A stretch of DNA of 64,000 nt from Polymyxa betae A26-41 (lineage: Eukaryota; Protista; Endomyxa: Phytomyxea). A program made the translations under genes and the position numbers. The notes under the pieces were generated by a model. The model did no database searches. It was not told the DNA's origin and saw nothing but the letters and a program-made list of their open reading frames with translations. Location of the stretch: NCBI GenBank assembly GCA_003693705.1, contig RBZT01000768.1, forward strand, positions 1 through 64,000, given 5' to 3'. Below, piece by piece: positions 11,320 through 55,200 of the stretch (within the stretch, counting starts at the first letter, position 1; each line of letters starts with the position of its first letter).

Positions 11320-14300
11320 CTATCTATCTTCGTTGGATGACGATGATAAGTAATCTGATTCTCCAGCTTGATTGTCAGCTGAATCAGCACCTACCACATT
11401 TATACGTGGAGCCGTCGAATACCCTGTTCGCTTTGTGAACGCGCTAGTCATTGCTTCAATGACGATATCGGGCATAACCCGGTCTTGCTTGAAGCGATGC
11501 CTGGAGAAGAGGTCGGCTAAAGGTCGACGTTGGAGAGCTTCGTCCACTAATTCCAAATAGTGTTGATTCTGACTCAAACTGAAGTATTGTCTGGCGTCCA
11601 GCAACATATCATGATCACGATCATCACCGAATCCATTATGACTTCCAATGATGAACCTTGCCCGAGCATCGAAGAAATGCATATCTGTGGCCTCAAGTAT
11701 AGAAACAGCCTTCTGTAGGAGATTGGTAGTAAACCGATCTGGCTGATCGGATTTCGTATCAACGAGTTCTAGACAACCAGCATATAGTTCTGCTATGCCT
11801 CGTGTATATTGATATCGGGATGAGAACTCACGTAGCTTCCTCACAACAACTGCCAGGTTGCGTTTAGCTTCCGATAAGTCTTCGTCTTCAGCCACAGGTA
11901 GAAAACGCCGTTTCTCTTCATTGCCTGATTTCCTGCTGGTTGGAGATACTGCCACTGAAGGCTGCTGCCTATTTACAAAATTCATTAATACATTGATGAT
12001 GCAGTCTTTCTCATGACTAACCTTGGACGACGTCGCGGATCGTCGATCAGGATTTCGACCAGATATTCAGCTACGAGAACGTGATCGAATAGGTCATACC
12101 AGGTTCGTAAATGTGATTCAGCAGAGTACTCCAAAAATAATGTCCCAAACCAAGCAGCAGCTTTGGATATTTGGCCCATTCTGAGAAAAACCAGAGAAAG
12201 TATAGCTTGACCAGCAATAGGAAGTTCATAATCAGTATGGTGGTTATCTAATAGTAACTCGGTGCACTTATCAAGTTGATGACGCTGTAATGCCATTAAT
12301 GCTTGCAATACAACAGCTTGATGACGTGATGCTTCTGTCAGTTGATGTTGATGACATATTCGTTCTAGCGTCGCCAACGAAGATTTTAACATTACCTGAT
12401 CTTCCTGAAGAATTGCCAAGAAAATCTGAGCATAAATTTAGAGATCGATTTGCTGGTTGATCGTGACAGACCTGAACCAAGAGCAGACGACGAGCTAATG
12501 TGGGATTTTCTGATAATATCCGGCTTAGGCTGCATGATCTCAACTTCGGTTCAGCAAGAGCGAACTTTCCTCTCACAATATCAATCACGGCAGATTGAAC
12601 AGTCACAACACCATATGGTCTGCAATGATCTATCAAAGCTTGCCCTAAATCCACCCAACCCTTCCATATAAAGAATTCACTGGCAACTGCACTGACTGTC
12701 GCCGTTAACACATCATCTTGTTCGCCCTCACAAAGATCCAATGCTCTTAGCGCGGCGTCCAATCCTTCGTCAAACATTCTCAGTTCAATGCACGCTTGAG
12801 CATACGCCAAATATAAGCGAGCAATAGTCGCTGACTTATTGAGGGTACTTAAGGGAACAGCTGTCTCAGTGCCAGGAACGATGTCTGGAGAAACCCTATT
12901 TAAGCTTTCTCTCCTGATGCCATTCCGGAATATAGACATAAGCCAATGTCGAATCTTATTAAGACCTGTTATCAGGCCATGACCAGTCGGCACAGGTTTG
13001 GCAATTTTTTTCAGCGCTAGTGTGACAGTCTCAATGGCGAGCGTATTCTGCTCGGTGATCAGTAGACATTCAGCCAACTCCAAATAGATAATTTCAATTC
13101 GAATGTGTGACCCATTGTTTTGTTGAGACGTCAGTGACGATCTTCGCTTGCTAATCAACGACCCAGATGATAAAGCTACACGATAAAACGTAATAGCCTG
13201 CAAACTCGTTAGATTGCACACCATGGTGAGGAATCAAGTCGAAACCTGATCAAGCTTTTGGCTTTTTCGGTACCGCCGAGCAGCTTTGACTTGATAATGC
13301 ATGCTTCGATCAAAATGTCGAGCCATTCTCCAATGACCAGCCAAAGCTTCATCATCATCTACATGAACTTGCTCTAATGCTTCTGCCACTAAACCATGAA
13401 GGCGTCGCTTGTATTCCATATCCAGGCTAGTGTAGATTTTCTGCTCAGTCTCCTCCGACCTAAACGCAAAGAGTAGTCCCTTTTTACGGCCTGAGCATCC
13501 ATGCGTTAGTCTGATGAAGCCAAACATGTTCTAACATAATTGCCTTCTGGCGATGGAAGCTGAACCAGTAATGATAGCTGGTTTGACAAAATTTGCAGCG
13601 CATCCATGAGCTCAGCTGGCGTCGTGGGCATATCAGAGCGCTGGGTCTGTAGTATTAATCAGCAATCAGCTTGACAATTTCTGTTACAGCGAATACCTCT
13701 CCTTTTTGAGATAAAGCATGTAATACAACCAATAGCAGATCCATATCGAATTTTGATCCAATCACAGAGCAGACAGCTAACACGGTTGATTGTGATTTTG
13801 TCAGCCCATCAGTGATAATCTGGTTAATGCGATCTCCTCTATAGAAGACTTAGATACAGAGCAGTGATGGCAAGTTTTAGATCCTACGATGATCGAGCAT
13901 TTGCTTCAGCTATCCTTCGACTTGCGTAGCACAGACGACTTGCACAAAAACAGAGGACGGCAAGATTAGACGAAGTAGTCATTTGAGCAGCTCGGAAAAC
14001 GAAATCAACGAATAGATGTGATGGAGTCATTCCACCAAGTCGTAAACATGCCAATAGAGCGACATCTTCGTGTGACATTTGAGGTAGATAAATCATTTCC
14101 CGTTCGAATTCATTATTGAACATAGACGTGCACTGCTCTGGTTTGGTTGAGCATGTCGCAATGACGATCAGGTTTTGAAGTTGGCCCAACATTTCGTCCA
14201 AACATCTCACGGATCTAGTGGGCAATTTAAGTGTTGTATCTGAAAAAACAGCAAATTGACATACAGTTCATCGATCATGTCAATGTCATCGATCATCATC

Positions 14301-17300
14301 ACAATTCGCTTACGATCATTCAGAGTCATTCCAATTAATACGGTCAAAATTTGTGCAATGTCTAAATTGGACTTCGGAGCAGCGGAAGACTGAGAGCGGC
14401 GATCAAGACCGAGATCGCATATGTGACCGATGTCACTTAGCAATTGTAAATAATTGGGTCCTAACTTCAAAATACATTGCACAAGTCTGGATCGAAATAC
14501 AGATAGAGATCCAAACTGATGCGTATAAACATATCGTAGGTACTGCCTAATAAGAACTTTGATGGTGTACCCAGGTTGGCAAGAGCGTTTTCGAGAACAA
14601 AAGAATGATGTCCTGCATATAACGTCAGACATTACATATACCATGAAGCTGACAGAGTTACAATGCGATATCTTGGCGCGTACACTGAATCTGTGAGTCA
14701 GAAACACGATGGATCTGGGACATTAACGAGGTTTTTCCAACACCATCGGCGGCTGCTATTAAGAATAGTTGTCCAGCATTACAGTATGTGTAGCTCTGAT
14801 CACGAATGATGGTTTCTTGTAGCATAGCACGTAACTGTATGCGGCCTGAAAGCAAGATACTAGTTCTAACTTGCAAGGGCATAGGGGATCTCAAAGATAG
14901 AAGAACGAAATGGTACCGAAGCAATCGAAGATTGTCACCAGAATTGAACTCAATCGTATTAATTTTCTGATCGAATGTCTCCTGAGTGACTTCATCAGTT
15001 ATAATCTGGTTTGTTGCTAACGAAACAGCAAGCAGAGCGGAATCAACAGCATCGCCAAGACTGTCAGCGTGTGATTAGATTGATAAATACATTCCACTTG
15101 GATCGCTCACTGACATGATTGGAATCGCTAGTGGGTCTATAAACCTGCAAGAGCATAATCCTGTCCCTATACCAACGCTGCATTCTGTTCCGAATTCTCC
15201 ACACATACGGGTCCGGATACGGAATGCGAATAAGAAAGCCAATGACGACCAGTCCAACTGAAAGGCAACCACCGCCATTAATCGCATTCCATTCGAGGAC
15301 ATAGAAGCAAAGACACAACTCGGCTCCGATAGCCGGATCGTTTGCATCTCGAATGCAAATGTTGACACCAGCAAGTGTGCCGTAACGGGATCCGTTGGGA
15401 TATCAACACGCACCGCAATCACAATCAATTCGTGAAGGTTTGCCGGATCTGAGATGTCCCCATGCCTGTGATGCTAATTGTCAGTAGCGGATTTTGCTGA
15501 ATCTCAGCTAGCCTTGCCTTTGTTTGGAGAATTTATGTTTGATCAACTGATCATCTTCATAAAAAATGTGATGTTGACGACCAAGTCTAATGACCTGGTC
15601 CATAACACGCTGCTGCTGGATTTCCACACTGCTGGCGAATGATTGCAGTATGGCACATCGTTTATCGTCAAACTCTTGTTTGACGACCACTTTTCCAGAT
15701 ATTCGTAATAGTTTGAGCAAGTTCTTATGCACAATGATCTGCCCAGAATCTGCAATGGGCTCAATTCGGAATGCCTAGAACCACGGTCAGAATAAGATCA
15801 TTATATTCAGGTACGACTACCTCTGATACAGCTGGACCAATACAAACATATCCTCGGGCACAATCTGGCCCGACTGTATCTAGCAAAATGCAATCGTCGC
15901 ACGACAAACAGAATTTGCATTGGAAAAGTTCTCCTAATCCTTGATCGATTAGTTGTTTTTTCATTTGGAATGCACAATTGACAGCCTAGTGATATAAGTA
16001 TGGACAAGGTACATGGGGGCGAATATTACCTGTGCACAAATCACCGATTGATTGAACGTTGGTGTCATGTCCCATATCATGACGAAACGGTTAAACGACA
16101 AATCCAGCAGAGCTCCTTGATGATGTTGGGCACATCTGAAAAAGGTTGAAAATAAATTTTGAAGTTGACTTGTGTCTTGAGTAATATTGCTTATCGAAAT
16201 GTTCAAAATAACGCCCCTTTGTTGATGATCAGTCGAAAGCAGAGATATGTTATCAAACAGGAAATACGTACAACAGTAGGGTTGACTGGCCATAAAGATG
16301 GTCTCTCTGATCTAAGCTGGTTGTGCATATAGCTCCAAATACGACAGGACGTGGTAATATTGCAGCATAATCACGATCAACTTCACTGACTGACTCAGCA
16401 TCGGATCCGGAAAATAGCCCAGAACGTAAATCACGGAATGCATCATAGATCCCGCTGCGATTCTGCCGAATTGCTTGTATACGGTGAGATTCGGCATTAT
16501 CGCGTCCTTTGCAACATGACAGATCCCATTCGTCCAGCAGTGTTTCATCAGCACCAGGATCATTCCCGCCACTTTTGCCATCATACACGCGAATGTCCTG
16601 TTTATCAGTATCGGCCATCTTCTCAAATCCCTAAACAGGAATTCCCAATAACTAGGTAGAACTGTCGACTAAACAGTGATTACATGTGACTCTTCAGTTA
16701 AAGGTAATGAGCACAATCTAGTCGTGGAAAGCATGGAAGAACTTTTCATGTTAACCTCTTCAAAAATAGGTACCGGGTTAAAAGTGTTCATATCTGGAAC
16801 ATCATCGTCCGGCTGCATTACTTTTTCCATAATAGCTGAAATGGTATTCTGCTGAATAAACGTGATGCGACTGTGGATGAAACGGCCAATGTTCAAGAGA
16901 TGTGTAGCATGACGAGATAAGGACTCGTTGTCTTGACGAAATTCGTCGAGATCAGCACTGCCCCCGGAATGATCACCAGGTAATGTCTCAGGGCTCGCAT
17001 GAAGCTGCAGATCGTTGAACTTGTTCCGAATGTAATCCTGATGACACCGAGCGCCAGTTTCAACAAACAGGCGAAATGCTTTTCTTGCATGTTCCCTCGC
17101 ATGCTTCCTGTTCTGGTCTTTATCCTCATAGATTTCAGCCATAAACATATGCGACAGAGCTTCAACAGAAGGTATTGCATACTGTGCAGCCGATCTTTGT
17201 GCTAACTGTAATAGATTAAGGACATCGATCGATTTCGATGATTTACAAGATAATAATGCAGCGTGCCATAGCAAAAAGTAAGTCCCTAATGACTGATCAG

Positions 17301-20300
17301 TGGATGAGCGAGAACTGGAGCAGGGATTTACTTGCGAACGTAATTGTTTCCGAGACCTTGTAAAGTAGTTGAACAGCTCCTTCAGCTTGAGCTATCACCG
17401 ATCTTCGTTGAATACCAAACATTTCTTCCAGTCCACTTCCTGAACTTGTTCTAAACTGCCGCAGAATGAAGACCAAGATTTCAGCTGCAATTGGAGCCGC
17501 AATCATAAGGGATAGGTCAACTCGAACACAAGCCTTCCGTAGATTCACAGCTGCCTAAATGAAAATCATTATTTATATAAAGCAATTGCACCAATCCGAC
17601 ATGATAGGCAGATGCAAAGTCACCGGTTTTATAGCGTAATACTGCTTCGACGCTAGAGTAAAAAGCCTGATTTGACGAATCTAGGCCAGAAGCAGGTTTG
17701 AGGAGTAGTAAACGCTCAATGTCTGCTACAAATGCGATAGCAGGATTCATCTGTGAGCACATAAGCTGATGAAGCGCAATCAGAAGACTGCAGTTTAGAG
17801 CTGTAGATGGATGGAAAAAAGCAATGGGCTTAGCCAACTGCTCCGCCCTATTGAACGCTTCCACTGATGGCTGCACTCTTCCAGAAATATAATGCACAAC
17901 ACCAAGACGCTGTAATGAGACGACAGACGCCTGCACATCATACAGGATCTCATCATATAGCTGCAGAGCACTCGATGCAAAATTGATCGATGATCGCCAA
18001 TACCCGCAAACACCTGCTGACTGACCCAATAAATTATAACATAAAGCCATTGTTCTTATCTCATCGGACCGCCTTATCCAATATCGAATTCGGTAAACGA
18101 TCAAATCTAAAAAGGCATTGTTCGTTAGAAGAGCACGATCGCATAGCACTTTGAGAAGCCAACAGTATCGACGTGCAGATACATCAGCAGATGATGAATC
18201 GCGCATCGTCAGAGCCTGTAATATTGCCCAATGTGCTGCCTCAGAATCACCTAACCGAAGCTCGACGTAAGACAAAGTCTCATATAATGCTGCTTGAGTA
18301 ATCTGATCTTGACTGGGAGGAGGTCGTTTCCGAATGCTCTGGCATGACATTAGCGCAATCTGCGCCCAGTATATACTGGCAGCGATGCTCGTGCGAGGTC
18401 GAATGTTTGCACCGATGTAGTCCTAGGGAGCATTTGAGGAAGATGTACCGAAAACAGAGTCCAATTGAAAAATACCAGTGCTCGAAGTATAATTGGTTTG
18501 GCAGATTCCGGATCTTGATTGTATAAGTGCAACCAAGCAATGTTAAGCCAATTGCCTGCGGTTACAATTTGGTGGTTGTAAGTTGGCGCCTTTTGATCTA
18601 GATCGATGCAGCGATAGAATAACTCTATAGCGTCGTTGATCATAAACAAGAACGAAAACTGAGTTGCGGCAAGTCCATTGAACTTGCGATCTAAGGCCGT
18701 CTGATTGGTTTGACTGTAATGACGACCAATTAGCGGTAGGACATAAGCATTATTACTGGATCCGCCTTCATAGTATTCGGCTAAATCAACATGAAACTTG
18801 TTGCGAGATTCACGATCCAATGTTGAATATACATCGCGTTGGATTGATGAATGTGGGAAGGAAATTCGAGGCGATGACGTTCTCATATGAGCTAATAACA
18901 ACCAGCCTCGGTTCTTGAGAACCATTAGATCAGATTTGAATTCGTCGATATCCTTATGCTGATCGCCCAGGGAGCGCAGGATATTGAATGGAAAAGAGAC
19001 ACCAATCACACTTGCTAGCCTTAACAAATTTTGTTGGGGCTTGGTCAGGCGATTCATTCGCTTTTTGACAAGATCAACCGAAGATCCAGAGATTGCGAAC
19101 AGAGCATCAACTGGTTCAACAACCAAATCAGCAATTGATTGCGATGTTACTTGAATTAATCGATCTTCTTGTAAGCAGAGGAGCACATCGGTTAGCCTTA
19201 ATGGGCTTCCTCCTGATTTTTTAATTAACAAAATCTCAAGCCCGCTCCTGATTTTTATTGCTGACAGCAGGCGACATGACAATCTTAGAACGTCAGATCG
19301 TTCCAATGGAGGGACATGAATCCAATGAGTCGACGCTGATAAGAGATGCCGAACTTCTGAATGTTCTTCAATGTACTTCTCTGCGGTGGGATCGTCGATC
19401 TGTAAAGTTCCTAATATGAAGACCCCAATATCGGGTGATGAAGCATATGAACTTAGAACGTGCCAGGTTCCGGTATCAAGCCATTGAATGTCTTCGATGA
19501 GTAAACAAATGTTGAATTCGCCGGCAATTGTCCTTAAAAGGTCACTGAAAATAATCGCCAGAATTTGGGCCCGAGACAGTTCTGATAACAGGCCTAGCAT
19601 TGCGTCAGATAATCCCTCAGAACCGAATATCATATGTGTGATCGCTTTTCGAAACGGGAGATATTTAGGCAGCCGATTGAAAAGCATTTCCATGACGGCA
19701 CTGACAGAAGTAATGCCTAGACATTTGCCATATTCTGAGATCATTTTTCGAAGGACGCGAATGACCGGCAAGTAAATTTGCTGTTTGTAACTCGATTCAC
19801 CATACATAGTAAATGCTTTTACATTTTGGTTTTGATCAGTAACAATCCTTAGAAATCTCTTAGCTATAGCCTGATGTGAGCACTTAGCTTAACCACAATA
19901 GCATACTTATTCGGACCATACCGATTTCCCGAATCCACTGGATCCATACAGAATTACTGGACTAATTGACGATGGTGACTGTTGTTGATAAAGCGCTGTC
20001 AATGTTTGCAGTTGATGGTCACGACCAACTAGAATCTCAGAAGTATCTAAGCCAGATAACAAGATCTCGTTTTCTCCGCCATAGCCTTCGTCAATTATGT
20101 CTGATATTGGCATCTGGTTAGACTGTCGATAGCCTTGAAGACGCAGGTCTCGGGTGGCGCTTGCAGATAAATCTGTTGGATCGCGTTGTATCTGGCTATC
20201 TGTTAGAATGTTATGTCCTTTGACCATGGGTATTAGTATTAAGCAAAAGTCATATTGCCGTGCTAAAGATGCACTTTTTGCCAGATGCTGTGCTCGAAGC

Positions 20301-23300
20301 CCGGAATCTACGACGCCATCGTTCCATAAACCAGATCCATCAATCTGTCCCATTGTTCCAAGCAAACGATGCGCCAAAGCCATATCGTAAATTAAATTTA
20401 GTTGATTAGCTAAGTCTAGCGCTTGAAGCCATTTGTTTGTAGCTTTCCAGATCGATGATCGATTTACGAAAACATCAAACATGCCTTGGACTAGAAGTGC
20501 TCGAGGTCTACCGACTGGGACCCTTTTAGCAAACTTTTTCAGAGCTCGCAGGCTCGCATTAGCCATACTCAATACTTGACGACGTTCAGTATCAATGGTC
20601 GCATCATGTAAGTCCTTATACCGAAGTATAGCCAGCTGACAAGTCCAAGCTAGAATATTAGTCAAATCATATGAGGCTGCTGAAGCTAAAGGCAAAGCAG
20701 TGTCCATAAATGCGAGAGATTGCTCTGGACGATCTTGATAATAATCGTAAATCATACGACAGACTGAATATTGGAGTGCAGATTTCGGGTCATCTTGTGG
20801 ATTTGGGCGTGTTAGTGCTTGAATCAATTGCCCAGCAGCTGCTATATTCCCAGTTATCAAATGATACATGGACCTTAATATCAGCATACGACTTCGTCCC
20901 CAATCGTATTCACAGAATTTAGCGATCCGTTCCATACTTTGGAGAACGTCTTCGACCTCTCCGACGTCCAAGAAAGCTAAAGACATCGAAGCCAGTTCGT
21001 CAAGAGTCCGAACCAGATGATGGGGCGAATTTGCAGACGTAAACTTGTCACTTGCCAACTTGAGGAATTGTCGTCCTTTAGCTGCATCTGCGAATATAGC
21101 ACAGGCAACCTGGGCTAATTTGATATATATTGATCCTTTGGTGAAGGGGGAGAATGGCTTCGCGTTAACACTTGAAAACAAATAATCACGTTCTGTATCA
21201 AACGTAATGACCTTATAGAGATTAGAAACGGTCATTAATTTGCCAACCGATAATGCCCCCATCATATAATTGGTCATTGCTTGGATTTTCTGTTCCATAG
21301 ACTTGGCAGCATCAGAGGTGATCAAGGCCCGAGTAGCGGATCTCATCGCCAGCACTCCATTTCCTAATTCAATTGCTATATTGCTTTCCATATTAAGAGA
21401 CTTGGCTCGCTCTAGAAGCAGCTGTCGTGTGAATAGCCCAGGTAGAACTGGACGGCATGGACCAGCAAGAGAAGAGGATAAGGCCAGGGCAACACGAGCC
21501 TTGCTGATAAGAGCTATCTTAGATTGCGAGGTGACATGGCTGTCAATATTCAATAAAGAATCCTCGATCAAAGTTAAACAGCGCGCCATTTCATGGTTCT
21601 CAAACAAATATTTTGCTGATGATCGCTGCAGTTTTGCAATTTCAAGCCTATCGTTTGGTGTATATTGCTCCAATAAAGACAGGGCTTTGAATGAATACGA
21701 AGCAGCTCCATTGAAGTCTCCAAGAGAGAAAGCTGCATCACCAGCTAACCGATAGTATCTGTGAGATAATAATTGAGTTGAAACTTGTAGAATCATCCAA
21801 TAATGTTAGTTACTTGATGGCATTAGCCAATTGCCCAGCACACTGATAGTGATGAGCTAGTTCAGCAGATGTGAGGGGAATTGCTTCAAGATGTCCAAGC
21901 AGAAGTCGGTCTTGCTGAAGGCGCTCTAACTGATCAACAATTAAATTATGGTATATGCTGGAATCGGATTTTGACAGAAGCCCATAAACCGTTTTCTGCA
22001 TCAAAGGCTGGCGAAATGCATATGTCGTAACCGGAAGTGTTGCAGTCGTTACGATGACGTCTTTCGATTCAAGATTGACCAAATTCTCCATTAATCTTTC
22101 ATTGTTATATGGAGATATGGCTTGTAGTAGATCGAGAGCAAATGTCACACCAATAACACTAGCACACTTCAAGATCTCTTGCTCAGACGGTGACAGTCGA
22201 TCAATATGGCTAGTAATGTTCTGCTCAAACATATGTTGAACGATCTCCATAGCTGTTTGCGAGAACTGTTCTGATGAAATCTTGGCTTCTGATAAGCCGG
22301 TAGCCAGATCCATTATTAATTCTGGGCTCCCTTCACTTGTCTTATGCACAGTATCAAGTACAATATCCGGAAGGTTAGTCAAGTGAAGCCGAAGACAAAG
22401 AAGCGCTTCAGTATCTCGACGTGACAAAGGCCCCAGTTTAACATGTTGAAAATATGACAGTTTACGTAGTTGGAAATCCAGCGTTGACATTTGACTTGAT
22501 ACAGATATGGGTCTAGAGGTCAGAAAAATCACCATATTTCGTGGAATGTTGCGACACAAATGACTCAGATATATCCCTGATGTAATATCGAGGTCACGAA
22601 CATTCTCTAATACGAGGCAGATCGAGCCACATATCTCAATCGCTGCTCGGTATAATTGAAGAAAGGCACGGATGTGTTTTTTTAAAGAGTCAGAAATTGT
22701 CGAGAGCTCTTCGATTTCACTTGAACCGGATTTCGATGAATTCCTTGAGTAATATGGCTTGCTGGATGCTATCGAGATCAAAGTCTCAACAGTTTCCTGG
22801 CTGAGATGGAGTTTGGCAGATACATTATTAAGCATCTCATGAAGAGAAGTGGCAGAATCAGGGTTGCCAGGACATAATAATGAAACAAAGCGCTGGAGTA
22901 CCGAGTTCCATAATACAACGTCAGCATTATCAGATATTCGACTACCTGCGAAATATAACGTAGTGAATTCATATTCTTGAGCAATCTCCCAGATAGACTG
23001 AACTAGTCGAGTCTTTCCCATACCGCTATCCGCTTCAATAAGCATAATCGTCTTGCATGATTTCAGCTTGTCAGATAGATCACTACGTGGTCCTAACTTG
23101 ATTCCTTCAAACATACTTCTAGCTAACTGCAGCTCAACAGAGCGACCCAGCATCAATGTTGCTGGCAGATGCAGTGTCTGCTCTGCAGAACCGCTTCCAG
23201 CAGCCGGATGGTAAACCTGGACGATACCAAGACGGCCTTTCACCTTGATCGGGGCCATTTTCGCGAATTCAATATTGAGTGAATGTCCTCCTCGAAGCAA

Positions 23301-24965
23301 AGCGGCCCTTTGTGTTTCGCCATCGCATAATAATCCATTATGCGACGCCACCATCAGACGAGCACTCAGATTAACGATATCGCCAACGATAGCATATTCA
23401 CATCTGATTTCATCTCCAACAGATCCGCAAAAAGCGCCACCAGTAGTAACTCCAATTCCCTGTATCACTCCAATGAGATTGATTCTCCTGAAGCAAGCGT
23501 AAATTACCGTTCTCATTCCAATCTCTAACAGCAGGCCCTGTATAGTAAGCGATGCTTGAACTGCTCGTATGGCATCGTCATCGTGAGAATTATACGGCAA
23601 ACCAAAGGCAGCAATAGCAACTGTTCCTTTGTCATCTTGAATCAACTGGCGTAACGTTCCATCGAACCGATGTAAAGCCTGTTGGATAAGCCGGAAAGCG
23701 CTCTGATTTGCTTGAATCTGCTGATCCGTATCATAATGGAAATCAGGAAGATTGATAAACACCATGGTGACTTGGCGCCTCTCACCAATAAGACCTTGTT
23801 TACCAGCATTGATTGCTAATGTCACAGATCGTGGCAAATAGCATGCTAAAGCCGATTCCACTGATTTGCAGATTTTAGTTTGTGACAAGAAATGCATCAA
23901 ATCCGGCATTGGATCGATGGACATAGGAAGGCTGTCAGCATTAATCGACTCCAAAAGAAACAGGTCATCATCCCGTTGGCGTACTTGACAAAATCCTTTA
24001 ATGAGTTCGAAAACTGATGACTGAATAACAACTTCACCACGAACAGCTGCCTCTAACGCTCTTCCCATTTCGAATATCGGCTGTCCAGCAAACATATACT
24101 CCCAGCGATTTTCAAATCCACCGAAGTGAAGTTCATGTAGCATGCCAGCCGATAGCCCAGAATGTAGCTCCAGATTAATGTTCATTTTCTGAAGGAGCTT
24201 CATACCAGTCTGCATTTCCAAGGCTGCTTTCGCAGCGCTCATTCCACATTTGGTCAGGTCATCCGGATTAGAGCCTGAAGGTCTGAACACCGATAAAAGT
24301 GCATCCCCAGCGAATTTTGTTACGTCTCCTCCGTTTCTCAGAATGGTATCGATAAACATAGAAAACACCTTATTCAGAATGGTTGCTAATCTCTCTCCGC
24401 CCATCTTCTGCAATGAATCTGCGTACTGCACGTTGCCCTGTTCTTTAGAAAGAGGATTTTTAGGCTGCTTAGCCAGATCAGCAGCTAATTGTGTGAAGCC
24501 AGAAATGTCTGACAGCAACACGACTCCAAAAAACTGAGACCGAACAGCGTCAGCGCTAGAGGCACTTCCCGCAGCATGACGTCCAGATAGTAAGATCGGT
24601 AAAGCAACAGCCCTGGGAACGTACCGACAAAGCACCTGAAATCGATGCAGTTGCTCTTCAGGTTTGTATCTATTTTTGAAACCTTCGTTCTTCCAGCGTT
24701 CGATTAACTCCAAGGCATTTCCTTTTAATGTAGGCGCGGAATCAATGGAGGGTATCTCGGCAGCTTTACGAGAAGAAGAATTTCGATCAAGTGACCGCGG
24801 TTTTATACTGGCTTTTCGACAAAGGCTATTTGAAATTGAGCCAGCAGATATAGCGACGCTGCTGGCTTGGCGAATGCTAATGCGGCGACGAGCTGTGACA
24901 GAAGGTGCTGCCTGCCCAGGGCAAGAAAGAGAAATAGAAGGTCTGCCACGAGCATTGCTGTCCAT
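11320..24965 (-). CDS. Giant soluble-cyclase (sAC/ADCY10/Dictyostelium sGC-like) STAND protein with three NTPase-TPR modules, roughly 4000 aa
   Basis: Cyclase C1 (LSDISGFT, GGDVTKFAGDALL) and C2 (LRQLIQDDKG, RCEYAIVGDIVNLSARLM); three P-loops ADSGMGKT (~23020), GSSGFGKS (~19930), ADGVGKT (~14740), each with Walker B and a (A/C)SVIG..F winged helix; TPR-like helices between; the ORF junctions checked are joined by in-phase GT-AG introns. Confidence 0.85.
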
Positions 24966-26232
24966 TTCCAATCAAATAATCTGGATGAAGCTCCTGGGTT
25001 GGACCAGGGCCAGAACTATATGATGGTGATTATAAGTCGACCATGCAGCAGGCGCCCTAGGCCTGGATCTTCGGTGTGCCCTGTTTTAGATGCAGATTAG
25101 ATGTGCCTCGGCGTATACCGAATCAAAGGTACACCGATGGTAATGGTTGAGCCAGCATGAGCTTCACAGTTGATCACAAATTATGAACGAACACCACATT
25201 GTGGTGGTTAAGGGCGGCATGACTCGTCATCTACGCAGGGAGCAATAACAGAATCAGATTCAGCAAGCATGATTGGAAGACCTGCTACAGCTTTGGCTAG
25301 GCTGAGCCTGATAGCGTGGCATACATACTGGGAACGTTCCGAGGCAGGCATCAACGTCGAGACCCAGCTAGAGCAGGAGCCAATGTCATGATCCAGCTAG
25401 AACAGGCATCAACGTCAAAGACCCAGATAATGACGGTGGTTATAATGAAGTAGCGCTCCGTCACTTTACTACAAAGACAAGGAAGATACTGTAACACTGA
25501 AAATGGCAAATTAACCGGCGCATGTAACGTAATCATTTGGGGAGTGGTAGTGCAGAGCATAAGCTTGTCATCGATGAATTTATTAACGACAATCAAAGCA
25601 GAGGTGTCTGGACTCATGATGGTTGGTGTCTGCGTACTGCTCTTCAGGAATAAGCCGCCCTTTAGTTGAGTCAGTCTACAAACTGGTAGTTGAGCAGAAT
25701 CCAGTAGTTCTGCATGTTGCTTTCAAAACCGTCTGCTAATAGCAAAACCAATTATCTAGGGTCAAGGATATCGCCCTCTCGCATCAAACATTTTCGTCAT
25801 GCCTCTTTCTCTTCATCTGCTATCGACATTCTGTCTTTGACTCAGCAATCTATGGGTGAAATTGTAATCACTTTGAAGACGGAAGTAGGGGCTCATGAGA
25901 ATCATAGTGTAGACATTCGTTTTATACCACTTCGCTCGATTGATATTTGAGAGGAATCATATACATCAGCTTCCTCAATTTGTTCGTTCCGGTGATCTGC
26001 TGTCATCATGTTAGTTATTGAGGCATGTCACTCAGTCAGAATTGTGGGTGCAACGACATTGCATTACTTACTAACAGAACGACGTTGCTCGTATCTGGAG
26101 TCGAGAAAGCAGCAGCGATGGACCTTCACGCTAGTATACAGTATCACAGGTCAATCCAAGAAAAAATAATGATAATGATGGTAAAAGCATATAAGAACTG
26201 TATTAGCAAGCAAAGATTGTTAGCCAAATATT

Positions 26233-27546
26233 TTATAGATGCTGTCTTAACTTGCTCTGCTCTAAAATCATCGTATCGATCAGATAACGTCCAGAATCGG
26301 TCCTTGCTATGTCAAATTCCAAAGTCAGGCCAAGACCCATATTGGCATTATATCTATAAACATCCGAATAACAATCAGCATCAAATCTGATTTTGGACTC
26401 TGCCAATTCGGCGATTGCTATTGGGTTAACTAATTGGCAGTATGAGCCGAGAATATTACCATAGCTGCTCCATAACGTCATATCGATCATGAAAACATTC
26501 TTCAGACAGCCTTTGAATTGGCCATATTGAAATAGCCAATCACTATGAACACAATCCAGATATGTATCAACTTCAACGCACGATTTCATTGACGATATGA
26601 GCGAATATTGCCCAGGTTGGCCACTATTGCCATCCAGGTGTACACCAGTGAATGATCGATGCCATAAAATAGCATTAGAAGAACGCATACAGATGGAGAG
26701 CGAGCTAATTTCACGACCCCGATGTCTTGTACAAGGTTTGCTCGAGATTGTGAATCGACATGGAACTAGCAGCTTGAAAATGGAAAAAGATGGTATCGAT
26801 AAGATTAGAAACTGGAATTCATTGTCACATTCAAAAACTGTAATGGAAACATTTCCATTTAATACTGCTTGGGACACCAGAAATCCTTCTGGCTTCGACT
26901 CAGCTTTAACAGGTTGCCATTCTGTAGAATCGTTTGTTTGTGCTATCATGCTTCGCTGAAACGTCGAGCCGCTGACTACCTCTATGTTAAGCGAACTTTT
27001 GGAAAAAGCGCCAGGTTGACACTTGAACTTCGCTAAGACTGACCAATCGTTGATCTGAAGTTGTCGCAGACACATTTTCATGCGAACGTTCACAGGCTTA
27101 AGACGAATCTCAGCCTTAATTCGGATATTTAGCCTCGCTATGACGTTTTTGAGGCGATTATCTGCTAAACCGCCTGGCACCCGGAAGAAATTGTCATTTT
27201 GATTCTTGATCATATGTTCCATCTTCTTAATAGCAACATTCCTCATTTTATGCCAGAAAAGCTGTTGTATTTGACTGGAATCCAGATTGCCACAATCAGG
27301 ACAGTGCTTCCATTGTCGTTTTAGTGCTCGAATCAGAAATTGAGGACTGCTGATTAAATTACGAAAATGGCGACATGTAAGAATGCAAGACAACAGGAGA
27401 TCGTGGACGGGAATGGCCAGCAAGATATCCCATGCCAATGCTTCCGGAAGACCCAGAAGACGATTTGAACCGGGTCCAACCCATGTCGGATTAACAGCAG
27501 ACCCAGCAGATTTCAAATGGCGTTTAGCACTGAACGCCAATGGCAT
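26233..27546 (-). CDS. F-box protein, FBXO15-like, intronless
   Basis: F-box LLGLPEALAWDILLAIPVHDLLLSCILTCRHFRNL; C-terminal FKGCLKNVFMIDMTLW resembles the FBXO15 FDGCI....MDVTL motif. Confidence 0.75.
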   Translation of the reverse strand: MPLAFSAKRHLKSAGSAVNPTWVGPGSNRLLGLPEALAWDILLAIPVHDLLLSCILTCRHFRNLISSPQFLIRALKRQWKHCPDCGNLDSSQIQQLFWHKMRNVAIKKMEHMIKNQNDNFFRVPGGLADNRLKNVIARLNIRIKAEIRLKPVNVRMKMCLRQLQINDWSVLAKFKCQPGAFSKSSLNIEVVSGSTFQRSMIAQTNDSTEWQPVKAESKPEGFLVSQAVLNGNVSITVFECDNEFQFLILSIPSFSIFKLLVPCRFTISSKPCTRHRGREISSLSICMRSSNAILWHRSFTGVHLDGNSGQPGQYSLISSMKSCVEVDTYLDCVHSDWLFQYGQFKGCLKNVFMIDMTLWSSYGNILGSYCQLVNPIAIAELAESKIRFDADCYSDVYRYNANMGLGLTLEFDIARTDSGRYLIDTMILEQSKLRQHL

Positions 27547-27725
27547 GAATCTGGGGCAGACGAGAGATGCTAAGAAAGAGGCGAGAACGACGAAGTTCAA
27601 CCTTGGTGCGTACTACAACGCGTCACAATGACTGAATTAACAAAGAGAGACTAAAAAGCAACGATTGAAAAAGAGCATTTCGATTAATCGTCGTACTAAG
27701 TCGATCCAAACCTCAGTAACTTAAT

Positions 27726-43826: not shown

Positions 43827-45520
43827 ATGCCTGCATTTAATCCATCTGCAGCTGAGTTTGTACCTCGATTTGATGCTGCCGCATTCGTACCTGATGCACA
43901 GACCTATACTGATACTCAGGAGGCGAATTGGGACGACGAGGACGCCCAGGATCAGCTAAACGTCAGCATGGCTGCCGTCTCTGTCCAGAGCCCACCAGCA
44001 TCCCAGCAGCAGCAGAAGCAGCCTGAGCCTGAGCCTGAACCTGAGCCGATCGTTGAAGAAGAAGAAGATGAAGATGATCAGGAAGAGGAGATTGATCCCT
44101 CCAAGTATCACGATCCTCGTGAGAATCTCAATGTTGTATTCATTGGTCATGTTGATGCTGGAAAATCGACCATCTCTGGCAATCTGCTTGTAATTACTGG
44201 CCAAGTAGATCAACGTACTGTTCAGAAATATGAACGTGAAGCTAAAGAGAAGAATCGTGAATCGTGGTTCTTAGCATATGTTATGGATACCAATGAAGAA
44301 GAACGTATTAAAGGTATCACAACCGAGATGGGACGAGCATCATTTGAGACAGCTGCTAAACGTTATACAATATTGGATACACCTGGACATAAGACATTAG
44401 TTCCAAATATGATTATGGGAACAGCACAAGCTGATATTGGTGTATTGGTTATATCTGCAAGAAAGGGAGAATTCGAGACTGGATTCGATCGCGGTGGTCA
44501 AACACGTGAACATGCTCTATTAGCAAAGACTTTGGGTGTTGAGAAGCTCGTTGTTGTTATCAACAAGATGGATGAACCATCTGTTAAATGGTCTGAAGAG
44601 CGATATAACGAGATTGTTGGGAAATTGACACCATTCTTACGACGATGCGGATTCCAGCTTAAGAAGAATCTCTGGTTCTTACCATGCTCTGGTATGACCG
44701 GTGCTAATCTCATGGAACCTGTCTCCAAGTCGGTTTGCCCATGGTATGGTTTCCCTATTCGACTAGGGTCTAGGGTTTAGGCTTTGTGTTTAGGTTCAAC
44801 GAAGGTCTGTCGTTGGTTGGCCTGCTTGACTCTTTACCGTCGAATCATCGTGATCCAAAGGCGCCCGTTCGGATTCCAGTATCTGGCCGTTATAAGGAGA
44901 TGGGATGTACCTTTATTATGGGGAAACTTGAGGTCGGCACTCTCAGCCTGAAATCCAAGCTCTGTCTCATGCCGGGTCGTAAACGCATCGAACTCGTCAG
45001 CATCGTAACCGACGAGAAAGAGCTCGAGTACTGTCGTCCCGGTGAGAACGTCTTGCTCAAATGTCGTGGTGTTGAAGAGGAAGATGTTCGTGTTGGAATG
45101 GTTTTATGTCCTGTTAAATATCCATGCAGCGTTGCTAGTGAATTCGAAGTTCAAATGCAGGTTACTGAACTGCTTGAACATAAGCCACTTATCACCGCTG
45201 GTTATGAAGCTGTTATGCATATTCATAGTGTTATCGTTGAATGTCAGATCAACAAATTGTTAGCGGAGTTCGACCCGCAGGGACGAAAGAGAAAGCGCCC
45301 TCCTGTGTTTGTTAAATCGAACAGTATTCTGACCTGTGTTATTTCAGTTGAATATCCAATTGCGGTTGAGGTAAGAGCATCATCACATCACTTGTCGGTT
45401 TGTTGATCGTGCCAATTGTAGACGTTCGCATCTCGACCTCAACTTGGTCGATTGACTTTACGTGATGAAGGCAAGACTATTGCTATCGGCAAGATCCTTT
45501 CTTTGGTGCCTGCTGCTTGA
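43827..45520 (+). CDS. SUP35: Translation release factor eRF3 (GTPase), 3 exons
   Basis: PAM2 FNPSAAEFVP; GHVDAGKST, RESWFLAYVMDTNEEER, GEFETGF..GGQTREH, NKMD; last exon QLGRLTLRDEGKTIAIGKI. Confidence 0.96.
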
Positions 45521-49272: not shown

Positions 49273-52200
49273 ATGGATGATTCCAATGGTGAACAGTCGA
49301 GTCTTGAGCGCCTTGATCAGCTCAGGCGACATTTGCCAGAGGTCATGTCCAGTCACATCCAGCAGCTGGAATCCGGCACTTTCGAAGAAGCAAACATGGT
49401 CAAGGTCATCTCATTGACCAAAGAAGCGTTCAAATCGGAAATCTGTGATCAAATATTTCGAGGTAGTTGATCACCCCTACCGTATTCTGGGTTTCAATTC
49501 GCTTCAGACGAATTAAGTACAGTCATGCCTTTCCTGACATTAATGGTCAAACAGCTCGCTGAGCCTAGCCTGAAAGTTTTGTATTCTCCTATTGTCGGTA
49601 CGTCAGGGAACTTGTTTTAAGACGAGTATGTAACTTTCTCTTAGACAACCTGATGCGTTTGTTTCGGTTTGTTAAGCGAAAAAACATCCTGGGGGTTCGC
49701 TACCTATTTTGCGATCTTCTTGGATGTATTTCTGAGATTTCACAATATGTTCAAAGTGGTGCTCATTATGCTGCTGAACAGGCGGGCGTACCCGTTCAAA
49801 TCTGCATGTTTTCGTCGTTTTGTCAGTTCATCTCGTGCCATTCCTTCAACTGCCAGAATGTAACAGATTTTTCTCCCACCGATTGCCAGCCGATTTCTTT
49901 CCAGTGCCAGATTCATCCCGTATCAAATCCACTCGTCGTTAACATCGAAACATTTAAGCGAATCGAATTATTTCATGCTTCATGCACTACGATCGCAGGA
50001 CAAATGGTCGCTGACAATATGTATCTGCACGATATATTATATACGCTCTCGTCACTGTTGTCAAAGCAAATTTTCGGGTTCTCATGTGAAGTTCAAGAGG
50101 TGATACTGGTCGGTCTAGCTCGCAACATCTTTATGTCTTTCGTTAGGCGACAGTTGGTGCTTTCGTGCAATACGTCAAGCATGCTCCATTACAGGCATCA
50201 TTCCCTGTGGTATTACAGGTGGTGGAGTTAATCTCGACCGATTGTTTCCGCACAGCGACCTTCGAATCGGAAGTTGCGGCTTTGCTCGAATTAACAAGAA
50301 AGCGGCTCGACTTCCAGTATATTAGGCCTATAGCGCTCGATATCTTGACGTACTCGCAAAGGGCCCTTGAAGTAGCACATACTTCATCTCTAAGAACCAG
50401 CTTGGTTCGTTTCGTATCGGAACTGTTCAAGGCCTTCCCTTATCTTAGGCTCTATGTGGATTCATTCAAGCAATTCTTTCGCAATCCCAACGTGTTAAAA
50501 TCTCTGTGCCCATTACTCAGCACTGTTTTGGAATCTCTTCCTGACACCTTTTTGTCGTCTTCATTGGCGGTTAATTCGGCTCCTGAAATCTCCCACGACC
50601 GTTCTTGCTCGAACTTTTTCGTAATTAACGCCTCGTGGTCATTCTTTCATGAATTCGCTCGGTCTGCTCTGGAAGCTCCTGTTTCCAAGTTCCCATCGCC
50701 CACGACCGAAGCGTCCAATGCGTTTTCCTGTGTTGCCTGCGTTTTTTCTTGCTTTGCACGTCAAAAAGATTGTGGTTTACTATCGCAGCTGACATCGCTT
50801 CTGAACGATTGGCTGCAAGCCATCTCAAATTTTTGTGTTGCCGTCTCTTCAAATTCTCAAGCGACACAGAATGCCACGCTTCTTCTCTCTGCATTTAATT
50901 TAATGTCGTCATGCTTCAGGTACCTGGAACCAAGTCTATTCCAGGTTTTACATCAATCATGCATATCACTTATCACGATTCCGTTCGCATCGTCAGACGA
51001 AAGTTTGAAATCGGATTTGATACTGTCCAGCTGTATACAGGCCTGGAGCAACCTTCCATTTTCACCTAACGATCAACTTGAAATGGATCTCGTACTGCAC
51101 CATCTGGGCCTGATTTTTCCCCGACTCCCATTCATCATGTTCCGGATATCGTCTGATCACGATATCAGAAGCAAACATCTCATTAGAGTAATAAGTGAGC
51201 TACATACCGGGCGCATTCAGCACCAGAATTCGAGAGATTTCATTCACTGCATTGGCTTGCTTTTCTGCATCCTTTCAAATTCGTGCTCCCTTCATTTCCA
51301 ACCTGATGACGATGTACCTGGGACATTGATTAAATGTCGTCTTTGCGATGAACCCAAACCGAATGGCGCCGTCTCGCAAGATTTAAAATATCCGCCCTGG
51401 TCTCTGTGTTCGTACTTTCTATGTTATCTCAATGAGGAGCATGCTGTCGAAGTTAGAGCTGAAATGTGCCGACAATTATTCAGATTGCTGTGCCATTCGA
51501 ATCGCGATGATCTTCATTGTGCGGCTCCATTGTTGCGCTCTTTATTGGTCGATCTTCTATTTGACCCCAAGCCTGAAATTCGAACAGCGACTGCCCAATC
51601 AATTCATCTTCTTGTATTTGGTGATAAAGAAACATGTGCTTTAGTGTCATTATGCGGTCCCACAAAGCAGGACGCAACTCGCCGTTCAAACTCTGTCCTG
51701 CATTCGATTCGATTTTTGGTGGAGAAACTTGTCGAGGTATGCTCTCTTGACATCCCCACAGCTCATCTAATGCTGATGTTCTAGGCTAATGAATGCCACA
51801 CTGATGAACGGCATAATGATAATCTCATGGATAAGTTCAAAGATGTCATTGCTGCGTTATCGTCGGTGGCCAAATATTTGACTGGCACAGCCCAATCTGT
51901 GATCGTGTTCGTCTTAATTCAGCAAATGATGCACGACGATGTCAGCTTACGTGCTATGGCCTATAAGCAGATTTGCGATATCGCCTTGCATTTGGGCATC
52001 TCAACCGCTGACCTCATCCATCAGCCGTATATAGAGGAGTGTCTTCTCCTATGGATGCCGGAATGTCCTCTGGTTTGCGATGAAGTTTGTGAGGCATTCT
52101 TGGGCACCAGCGTTTGCGATTTCCTACATCGATGCTTACCCCGCGTCCTACCAGGCCTGATTCTGAAGCATTCCGAAGAAGCTCTTCACGAAATCGGACT

Positions 52201-55200
52201 GAGACTTGGCGTTTCGGTTCGCAGCTTCGTTATGGATAGAATATCTCCAATATTACTTCGAATTCTTCTTGATAATGATCCAGAAGAAAGCAAAGCGGCA
52301 TCTGCGATCGCCTTCCTCTCTGATAAAGTGATCCCTGGGTTCAGGTTTTCCGAATTGCTGAAACAATCCAAATCCCTGCTTTTGGAGAATTTGGTTGATG
52401 CAATGGGCATTCCAAACCAATGTGAGAATGCAAAATACGCCCTTCAAATCCTTGTTCTTGCAGATTCGGGGTCTGCATTCAGTGATTATGTCACTGAGAA
52501 AATCGACCTCTCCGTTAACGATAATCAAATGTCATCGTTCTGTTGTGAATATTTCTTGATGATGTCCGATTACCTGTGCCAGTTCATTCAAGGATCGAAT
52601 TGCTCTGAAGATCGCAAGCTACAAGCTTTTCGCAGCCTGGACTGCTTATGTCATCTAGTCGGGAACCGCATCTATAACTTCTCTTCGAAGCTGATCGCAA
52701 CTGTCAAATTAGCGCTGGATCGCTCTGGCTTGGACTCGATCAAACTGGAAGCTCTTAAGATATTCGAGGCGTTCATCAAATTGCTATCCAATGATCAACT
52801 GAGCACTTGTCTCAGCCAGTTGGTCGTAACATTACTTTCTTGTTGGCATTCCAATGGGAATGCATCATTACGACAAAGCATTACCGCTCTATTGGAAACG
52901 TTGCTTATCAAGAAACGGCAAGCTCTCTGCGACAGTTTTAATGAGATTCCGATGATTCCCGATGACCCTTCTTTACACCATATCAAGACTTCGGTAGAAG
53001 CATTCACAAGCGGCTGTAGTGTTGTAAAGAAACTTGTAGGCTTGCGAAAAGTTTCATTTGTTCTAGTGATCTTAAGTTTGGATAGGATAACCTCATCCGT
53101 CTGATGGATCATCCAAGTGCCAATGTCAGAGAGATGGCTCTGTCTCAACTACGAATATTATTACTTCATTATGAGAATGATATTCATGCATTAATTTCGA
53201 GCAACGACACCCAGCTAACTCAAGTAGTCATCACCTTAATGCATCGCTGTTCAGATCCCTCAGCAGAAGTACGTCTTCTGTCTGCCGAGTGCATCGGCGT
53301 TTTGGGTGCCCTTGATCCAGTACAAATCGGTTACGTTAACGTTCGTAACGAGCCGGCTGCCATCAGCACAGTCGACGACTTCGCTGTGGCCCTTTGTGTT
53401 GACTACCTTATTAATGCGATTCGATCTTTACCTCCAGCCGATCAGAACAGATCCATGTTCGCTCTGCAGGAGATTTTGAAGTTTGTTGGATGTCGCCCTG
53501 AGACTCCTGACCTCGCCCGAGACCCGTCTCTGCATACAGAATTGTTAGAAACAGATCGCCGGGCAGTCGCGTTTTGGTCAAAGATCCCTGTTGAGCTTCG
53601 CGATGTGGCTGTTCCCTGTCTGCTGTCGAATTTCGTAATCCCATCGAGAAAGCCCTCACCTTATGACGGTAACGTCTTCTGGCGTCATGAGATTTCTTAC
53701 GAACGATGGCTTGCTGAATGGACTCGCTTTCTGATCGCTAATAGTAAAGGACCGCTAAAGCCCATATTTGAAGCATGTCAAGGCGTCGTTGTTTCAGATT
53801 TAGCAACCGCCCGATTTCTTCTTCCACATCTGGTTATCGCCATTCTACTGGCGGAAGATCAAACCTGCATCGAACAGATTCGCAAAGAGATTCTCACCAT
53901 TCTGGATCACGCCATAACCGAAGGCCCTCGTCCTATTCGATCTGAGCAAAGCTCGCTGCAAACCATCTTCGATCTGCTGGATTTACTGCGAATGGGCTAC
54001 GAATCGCAACGCTGTCGTACGCTCCCAATCGCTTTAAAGAAACTACGTTGCTTTGAGTATGCGACATACCCATGTGTTGCAATACAGGAATTGTTAGACT
54101 CGATCCCGCATATGACGTTAGCTCGGTCTGCTCATGCTTGCGGTGCGACAGCTCGGGCGTTACGTCATTTTGAGCAACACATCCGCCAAACTGATGCCCT
54201 CCTGACCTCACAACATCTCGAATTCCTTCAGTCGCTGTTCTGCGATCTCGACGACGTCGACGGAATGAAAAGTATCCCAGCCCTACGAACAGAACCAGCG
54301 ACCCCGTCAGAGCAGGGCCGCGATTACGAGAGTCTCGGCCAATGGAATATGGCGTTAATCTGCTACCAAGAAGAATGCCGAAGCCATCTGGATAATCACA
54401 ACTCCAGGGCCCGCCTCCTTCACAGCATGTTCAAACTGGGTCAGTACGAGAACTGCATTGCTCACGTCCGGAAATTTCTGGACGATGGCGCCGCCCCGGT
54501 TCCTTTACTTCAAGGTCGCATAATTTCGCTGGGCATTGAAGCGGCCTGGAGGATTTCCGATTGGGAGGCGCTGCAACACCTCACCGAACATCATCCAGAT
54601 CAGTCATGTTTCGAAGTCGGTCTAGGTCGTGTATTCATATCCTGGAAGCAACAGAATGTTGGTGACATTGAATCGGCGCTGCGATTTACTCGCATCGGTG
54701 TCATGGGCAAGTTGGCTGCCGCCGCTCAAGAGTCGTATTCGCGCGCCTACCCGTTCTGGGTCCAGTTGCAGCTGTTACATTCATTCTCGACGGCGTTAGG
54801 CCATGTCTCATCACGTTCGTCCTGGGATTGGTTCCGAGATGTGAACAATATGCAGCCGAAGTTCTCAGTTCGTGAGTCGCAGTTGTCCCTGCTGCGTACT
54901 GTATTCGAGCTATCAGGTTGGCCGGATATGGCCGGCCGCTGCTGGTTACAACTAGCTCGGGAAGCTAGACGTTCAGGTGAGCTCGAACAGGCGTCGTACG
55001 CTGCCTTGCGTGCCCAGCGCCTTCAGATACGAAATTCCGGTATCGAACAAGCCAAGATATTACGAGCCCAAGGTCTCCTACATCAGGCTCTGAACGTCCT
55101 CGAGGAATACTCGAATGTCGATACGTCGATCGTGGCTGACAGCCTGAGCGCTGACCGGCAGATTGAACTGTGTAACATGGCGTGCCTGGTGGGCCAGTAC

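What the first reader, a model, noticed from the sequence alone, without database searches (positions are those of the whole stretch)
11320..24965. Giant triple-STAND nucleotide-cyclase receptor: Cyc-Cyc/STAND/TPR + STAND/TPR + pseudoCyc/STAND/TPR in one chain
Seen: three NTPase modules, each with GR..[EQ]L, Walker A (~23020, ~19930, ~14740), Walker B (VLENVRDLD, LIEDIQWLD, MIDDIDMID), a winged helix (CASVIGVTF, LASVIGVSF, VCSVIGSKF) and a helical repeat array. The first TPR array runs into NTPase 2 with no stop (ORF 19907-21796). The module 2 to 3 junction splices in phase (SH/GFEKMAD, STLL/GVILNI). Known: ADCY10, Dictyostelium sGC and bacterial cyclase-STAND-TPR proteins carry one STAND module, and STANDs including NLRs signal by oligomerising. 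Inference: internal triplication has made a covalently pre-assembled multi-sensor switch controlling one active cyclase, possibly a multi-input or NLR-like signalling system. I do not know of a description of this layout.
Basis: partly seen in the sequence, partly recalled or inferred. Interest (0 to 1): 0.9.

Follow-up and report, generated by a model that had tools for sequence, protein, structure and literature searches.

The report
Giant three-switch nucleotide cyclase gene
A root-parasite protist has one real, spliced gene for a 4,214-residue signalling enzyme in which a working cyclic-nucleotide cyclase is chained to three ATP-switch/sensor modules and a dead copy of itself, an unusual but database-listed elaboration of the sperm-type soluble cyclase.

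Summary
Window 24965-11320 (minus strand) is one 21-exon gene of 4,214 aa: cyclase pair/STAND/TPR + STAND/TPR + dead cyclase pair/STAND/TPR. Public contigs skip all 8 predicted introns tested, including the module 2/3 junction. The Plasmodiophora brassicae orthologue (PBRA_001450, 4,742 aa) carries all three modules in one 4,707-codon genomic reading frame. The genome matches the Polymyxa betae draft. 'Internal triplication' and 'NLR-like' are weaker. Five metagenomic eukaryote relatives have only the active and the dead-cyclase modules, so module 2 is probably a later addition (tree favours this; one clade not rejected, p 0.07). The gene is single-copy and conserved. The cyclase keeps its catalytic Asp/Asp/Asn/Arg but has Gln/Ala where sAC has Lys/Thr, hinting at cGMP. 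Module 3's Walker A is lost in P. brassicae. A bacterial protein has three STAND modules independently. I found no paper on this layout. Verdict: new variant of the sAC/SWACOS-type cyclase. The scan noted this same stretch before, not on other DNA.

The parts
11320..24965 (-). Whole gene, 21 exons, 20 introns (44-55 nt), 4,214 aa
   Evidence: collinear with P. brassicae PBRA_001450 exon by exon
23964..24602 (-). Cyclase C1, active: metal Asp153 and Asp221 (sAC D47, D99), Lys217 (K95); Gly at sAC R176, His at K144
   Evidence: residue roles from PMC12867704 Table 1
23229..23858 (-). Cyclase C2, active: Asn516 and Arg520 kept; Gln440 and Ala509 at the base-selecting sAC K334 and T405; holds in-frame 48-nt intron 23460-23507
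   Evidence: PF00211 E 1e-7
21837..23162 (-). STAND module 1 (NTPase + winged helix): Walker A Lys kept, Walker B E-N, sensor TSR and GxP kept, FxH changed to FRQ
20351..21757 (-). TPR-like array 1
   Evidence: 40% identical to orthologue
18707..20047 (-). STAND module 2: Walker A GSSGFGKS, Walker B E-D, GxP and FxH kept in both species; sensor Arg absent; intron 19871-19921 read in contigs
   Evidence: orthologue module 99.9% by hhalign
17047..18706 (-). TPR-like array 2
   Evidence: TPR_2/TPR_12 weak hits
16631..16683 (-). 53-nt intron joining module 2 to module 3 in frame; its retention would stop the chain at 16671
   Evidence: skipped in contigs of all 4 runs
15685..16378 (-). Pseudo-cyclase C1, both metal Asp motifs gone
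   Evidence: orthologue HMM iE 2e-10; hhalign 96%; Foldseek top hits all class III cyclases; window exons align to it
14943..15449 (-). Pseudo-cyclase C2 (weakly detected): DDKG, Asn and Arg motifs replaced
   Evidence: hhalign P 0.0016, probability 16%; position and VGIGTG motif
13321..14865 (-). STAND module 3, degenerate: AADGVGKT here, no Walker A Lys in P. brassicae; winged helix well kept
   Evidence: orthologue 97.9% by hhalign over 395 columns
11428..13320 (-). TPR-like array 3; its last part is the best-conserved repeat region (55-57%)

Best explanation
One cytosolic enzyme of the soluble-cyclase (sAC/SWACOS) type. SHOWN: a single 4,214-aa reading frame with the layout C1-C2/STAND/TPR + STAND/TPR + pseudoC1-pseudoC2/STAND/TPR, conserved in a second plasmodiophorid; catalytic residues kept only in the first cyclase pair. 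INFERRED: C1 and C2 fold into one active site, as in sAC, that is held low by the STAND region behind it. The extra modules supply in one chain the partners that STAND proteins otherwise gather by oligomerising. Module 2 (best-kept Walker A/B) is the likeliest ATP/ADP switch; module 1 binds nucleotide and passes the change to the cyclase; module 3 is a dead copy acting as scaffold or allosteric input, its last TPRs binding a conserved partner. Output is more likely cGMP (about 55%) than cAMP (30%). History: an old duplication gave an active-plus-dead two-module family in eukaryotes, and a third STAND/TPR module was added in the plasmodiophorid line. Likely role: housekeeping or life-cycle signalling such as zoospore movement or encystment (analogy only).
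For: Frame and splicing. Orthologue with a 4,707-codon uninterrupted genomic frame over all three modules. Domains. Residues: with PMC12867704 and PMC12250328. Two-module relatives P0002, P0154, P0085, P0072, L019 with alignable pseudo-cyclase in the four aligned. All members read share Gln at the K334 site and nearly all Ala at T405 (one Ser), while the three other cyclase-STAND genes of this genome have Lys, and Ser in the two read. Full-length sAC is about 3-fold less active than the truncated form, tied to the P-loop region (PMC12802110). Dictyostelium sGC is an sAC-like guanylyl cyclase used in chemotaxis (PMC11988041). No transmembrane segment in the orthologue.
Against: No activity, nucleotide binding or oligomer state was measured. 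Added nucleotides did not regulate full-length sAC in vitro (PMC12802110), so the switch model is unproven even for sAC. Neither module 1 (Walker B E-N) nor module 2 (no sensor Arg) has the full motif set. That Gln/Ala means GTP rests on my memory of Dictyostelium sGC; the papers were not held. 14 of about 143 single-module, mostly bacterial relatives also have Gln/Ala, untested. The tree is weak for modules 2 and 3 (long branches).
Confidence: 0.6

Rival explanations
1. Same gene, but shorter isoforms do much of the work: an internal start near 17300-17700 yields a module-3-only pseudo-enzyme, or retention of intron 19871-19921 or 16631-16683 yields truncated cyclases, like sAC-t versus sAC-fl.
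For: In runs X1 and X5 the contig over module 3 has depth 50 and 34 against 0-8 over module 2 and 8-16 over module 1; a Met follows the junction intron at 16618; both introns carry an in-frame stop.
Against: Depth is one figure per contig, 3' bias would raise it, run X2 is flat, and no retained form was listed. The orthologue has no intron at either place. No stand-alone module-3 protein was found.
Confidence: 0.15
2. True internal triplication of one unit, with three independent sensor-switches.
For: AU test does not reject one clade for the three modules (p 0.07), nor M2+M3 (p 0.20). A bacterial example of real internal triplication exists (P0044, 96 support).
Against: Modules are only 16-24% identical to each other, no closer than to bacterial ones; M1 joins first modules of two-module relatives (92-93); M1+M2 rejected at p 0.04; module 3 Walker A lost in the orthologue.
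Confidence: 0.12
3. NLR-like immune or cell-death receptor whose TPR arrays sense invaders and whose cyclase is the effector.
For: Effector-STAND-repeat order is the NLR order; STAND clades including SWACOS appear in conflict systems (PMC8195603).
Against: Single copy, conserved one-to-one with P. brassicae, no repeat expansion or DNA repeats; no variant letters in 4 runs.
Confidence: 0.08
4. Two or three adjacent genes wrongly joined.
For: No single contig spans the gene; a stop at 16671 and an ATG at 16618 flank the junction.
Against: The junction is spliced in 4 runs; one contig runs from TPR array 2 into module 3; the orthologue is one genomic ORF.
Confidence: 0.03

Closest known systems
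Mammalian soluble adenylyl cyclase ADCY10 (sAC, full-length)
   Same: C1-C2 pair followed by a STAND/P-loop region; best PDB match (E 3e-31); D47, D99, K95, N412, R416 equivalents kept.
   Different: One STAND module and 187 kDa, against three modules and 4,214 aa; K334/T405 are Gln/Ala; bicarbonate switch R176 is Gly; has an added dead cyclase pair.
Dictyostelium sGC (SgcA)
   Same: sAC-like soluble enzyme with two catalytic domains that makes cGMP (PMC11988041); from memory also Gln/Ala at the base-selecting sites and one AAA/TPR tail.
   Different: Not retrieved in any search here, so not compared directly; from memory a single STAND module and a long N-terminal actin-binding region absent here.
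Bacterial cyclase-AAA_16-TPR proteins (SWACOS-type STAND; Thioploca, Chloroflexota and others)
   Same: Each module aligns over its full length to their profile; 35-41% identity in C2.
   Different: Usually one module of about 1,350 aa with Lys/Thr (98 of 143). Rare tandem forms (P0010, P0017 two units; P0044 three STAND/TPR) arose separately.
P. brassicae PBRA_001450 (CEP00396.1, A0A0G4IZA4; XXQ30884.1)
   Same: One-to-one orthologue, all modules collinear, 22-59% identity by exon.
   Different: Almost intron-less, 4,742 aa, module 3 Walker A lost; annotated only as hypothetical or 'guanylate cyclase domain-containing'; no paper names it.
Unnamed two-module eukaryotic giants from metagenomes (P0002, P0154, P0085, P0072, L019)
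   Same: Active Gln/Ala cyclase pair + STAND/TPR, then pseudo-cyclase + STAND/TPR.
   Different: No module 2 detected; host organisms not identified.

Membership tests
Class III nucleotide cyclase, sAC-like (active) | Tandem C1-C2 domains with two metal Asp in C1 and Asn/Arg in C2 | tested here: met
Adenylyl cyclase of the sAC type | Lys334 and Thr405 select adenine | tested here: not met
   Gln440 and Ala509; lowers 'is an adenylyl cyclase', not 'works like sAC'
Bicarbonate-activated sAC | Lys95 and Arg176 | tested here: not met
   Lys kept, Arg176 is Gly (PMC12867704)
Guanylyl cyclase | Makes cGMP from GTP | not testable with these tools
   needs an assay; canonical Glu/Cys pair is absent, Gln/Ala present
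STAND NTPase, SWACOS-type | GR..E motif, Walker A, Walker B, GxP helical domain, winged helix, then repeats, fused to a cyclase | tested here: met
   modules 1 and 2; clade name from Leipe et al. 2004 as cited in PMC8195603; no curated SWACOS model was available, so the clade label itself is by resemblance
STAND NTPase, SWACOS-type | Intact nucleotide site in module 3 | tested here: inconclusive
   fold-level match 97.9%; Walker A Lys present here, absent in orthologue
STAND NTPase | ADP/ATP switch and ligand-induced oligomerisation | not testable with these tools
   needs biochemistry or cryo-EM
NLR immune receptor | NACHT or NB-ARC domain | tested here: not met
   window exons: NACHT 16 bits against cut-off 26.7, no NB-ARC; best family AAA_16. 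The orthologue's NACHT score (31.7) rests on a short Walker A stretch, AAA_16 scores 89.9
NLR immune receptor | Expanded, fast-diversifying repertoire | tested here: not met
   single copy, conserved

The most novel reading that the evidence does not exclude
An undescribed eukaryotic family of Gln/Ala (probably guanylyl) cyclases in which an active unit and a catalytically dead copy are fused and work as a built-in STAND hetero-oligomer; in plasmodiophorids a third module adds a separate ATP-driven input. It would be a single-chain model for how STAND modules control soluble cyclases and might drive zoospore behaviour.
Probability: 0.3. Interest if true: 0.75.

Novelty: new variant of a known kind. 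Interest (0 to 1): 0.5.

Why it matters
What the STAND region of soluble adenylyl cyclase does is still open: a 2025 study found no regulator for the full-length enzyme (PMC12802110). A natural protein that fixes three STAND modules and a dead cyclase copy in one chain offers a defined stoichiometry for structure work on that question. It also flags a conserved cyclic-nucleotide source in plasmodiophorids, whose signalling is little studied. The parts are all known, the orthologue is already in databases, and no function is shown, which limits the surprise.

Tried and rejected
Separate genes: rejected. Recent DNA-level duplication: no direct repeats in 11000-25500. Stand-alone module-3 proteins: none among 8,000 candidates. 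Extra upstream coding exons: not needed, the orthologue aligns from residue 21-22. AlphaFold of the pseudo-cyclase region was poor overall (pLDDT 35); only the pseudo-C1 core (60-78) was usable. Naming the hosts of the metagenomic relatives failed: cluster look-ups gave no organism, cytochrome c1 only shows a eukaryote. A metagenome scan gave more Gln/Ala members but on contigs too short to count modules. No synteny signal between the flanks of the two plasmodiophorid loci. Primary papers on Dictyostelium sGC and the sAC crystal structure were not held. Ten literature searches found no description of this layout; the library lacks most subscription journals. No Spongospora orthologue turned up, which is not evidence of absence.

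Full report
Source. The window's genome has 27,085,814 bases in 1,001 contigs. The Polymyxa betae draft has 1,001 contigs and 27,085,946 bp (PMC6328671), so the organism is almost certainly this plasmodiophorid root parasite (inferred). Nothing looked human.

Gene structure. From six-frame translation I placed 20 introns of 44-55 nt (mean 50; 18 GT-AG, 2 GC-AG). Removing them gives 12,645 nt, 4,214 aa and no internal stop. The joined model was translated in a script only to check the frame. It was not sent to any search: searches were run exon by exon by reference, or with the stored natural orthologue P0001, and the joined search step was left out.

Transcript evidence. Contigs from four public runs laid on 15911-21900 skip exactly the eight predicted introns there. 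The runs are not on record as RNA; the clean intron skips imply it. The module 2/3 junction intron 16631-16683 is skipped in all four runs. One 5,870-nt contig runs from TPR array 2 (about 17650) into module 3; its length fits all 12 downstream introns being spliced plus a 333-nt 3' tail (inference). No contig spans the whole gene. Contig depth is higher over module 3 in two runs and flat in a third; the tool warns that this cannot rank parts of a gene, so I keep it only as a rival.

Orthologue. A phmmer search with STAND module 1 against 1.84 billion proteins gave one close hit, P0001 (E 1e-132, 45%), which is P. brassicae PBRA_001450, 4,742 aa. The window's exons align to it in order from end to end. 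Its genomic locus has a single open frame of 4,707 codons covering all three modules. This shows, without any splice model, that the three-module chain exists as one reading frame.

Domains. HMMs built from 45 single-module relatives find C1, C2, NTPase, winged helix and TPR in module 1, and NTPase, winged helix and TPR in module 2. Module 3 in the orthologue matches the STAND profile over 395 columns at 97.9%, module 2 at 99.9%. The region before STAND 3 is a cyclase remnant: pseudo-C1 scores iE 2e-10, 96% by profile comparison, and a low-confidence model of it hits only class III cyclases among the top 50. Pseudo-C2 is weakly supported. All four catalytic positions are replaced there.

Active site. 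Against human sAC (residue roles from PMC12867704 and PMC12250328) the first pair keeps both metal aspartates (Asp153, Asp221), Asn516 and Arg520. It has Gln440 and Ala509 at the adenine-selecting K334 and T405, Gly at the bicarbonate switch R176, and His at K144. Most single-module relatives have Lys/Thr (98 of 143; Gln/Ala 14), and the three other cyclase-STAND genes of this genome have Lys. Dictyostelium sGC is an sAC-like guanylyl cyclase (PMC11988041); that it has Gln/Ala is my recollection and could not be checked. The pair is 71-86% identical between the two plasmodiophorids, so it is under strong constraint.

Nucleotide sites. Module 1 keeps Walker A, the sensor TSR and GxP but has E-N in Walker B (139 of 154 matched relatives have E-D) and FRQ for FxH, in both species. 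Module 2 keeps Walker A, E-D, GxP and FxH in both species but lacks the sensor Arg. Module 3 has AADGVGKT here and no Walker A lysine in P. brassicae; second modules of relatives are also often degenerate. So module 3 is probably a pseudo-enzyme unit throughout.

Family and history. Eukaryotic metagenome proteins P0002, P0154, P0085, P0072 and locus L019 have an active Gln/Ala cyclase module and a second STAND/TPR module; in the four proteins aligned it is preceded by the same pseudo-cyclase; none shows module 2. In two trees module 1 joins their first modules (support 92-93), module 3 their second modules (62-81, long branches), and module 2 stands alone. AU tests: all three as one clade p 0.07, M1+M2 p 0.04, M1+M3 p 0.13, M2+M3 p 0.20. 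Rows left out of the second tree: 11 single-module proteins, both P0010 modules, L019 first module; the window's module 3 was represented by the orthologue, and its module 2 by exon 4 alone. An old duplication plus a later added module is favoured, not proven; module 2 may derive from module 3's ancestor. Tandem STAND layouts also occur in bacteria, including a cyclase + three STAND/TPR protein from an actinobacterial MAG (P0044), whose modules do form their own clade.

Mechanism. Most likely a cytosolic, self-inhibited cyclase whose STAND partners are built into the chain; module 2 as switch, module 3 as dead scaffold or input, cGMP somewhat more likely than cAMP. Full-length sAC is about 3-fold less active than its truncated form, but no regulator of its STAND region is known (PMC12802110), so all regulatory steps are inferred. 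An immune role is unlikely: single copy, conserved, no repeats.

Verdict. Real, one gene, conserved; a new architectural variant of the sAC/SWACOS-type cyclases, present in databases but not described in the literature I could search. Interest 0.5.

Noticed in passing
window 16849-17239: In runs X1 and X4 a separate contig matches this 390-nt stretch of exon 7 but continues into unlike, GC-rich sequence on both sides. The assembly has only one copy. The loose flanks have no reference, so they were not searched.
   Followed up: partly
window 24966-26180: One contig of run X1 extends about 1.2 kb upstream of the start codon, up to the end of the F-box gene at 26233-27600: long 5' UTR or merged transcripts.
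   Followed up: no
window 1297-5366 (+): Low-GC (32%) stretch at the contig end with frame-shifted or spliced ORFs of a long TPR-like protein (TPR_12 E 6e-7 in 2966-3658).
   Followed up: no
G000:C941:190112-196608, C467:75373-79211, C355:22475-28540: Three other cyclase-pair/STAND genes in this genome, with Lys at the base-selecting site; the C941 gene appears to continue into a PH-like domain after the winged helix.
   Followed up: partly
L018:10001-24401 versus window 11320-24965: The P. brassicae orthologue has about 172 nt of intron in all, the window's gene 20 introns: wholesale intron gain or loss between two plasmodiophorids.
   Followed up: no
P0044, P0010, P0017, P0109, P0028, P0068: Bacterial proteins with two or three tandem STAND/TPR modules, some with repeated cyclase domains.
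   Followed up: partly
window 8827-10654, 43827-45406, 51827-56271: Ordinary neighbours: PI31 proteasome regulator, BPL_N protein, eRF3/EF-Tu-like GTPase, ATR kinase.
   Followed up: no
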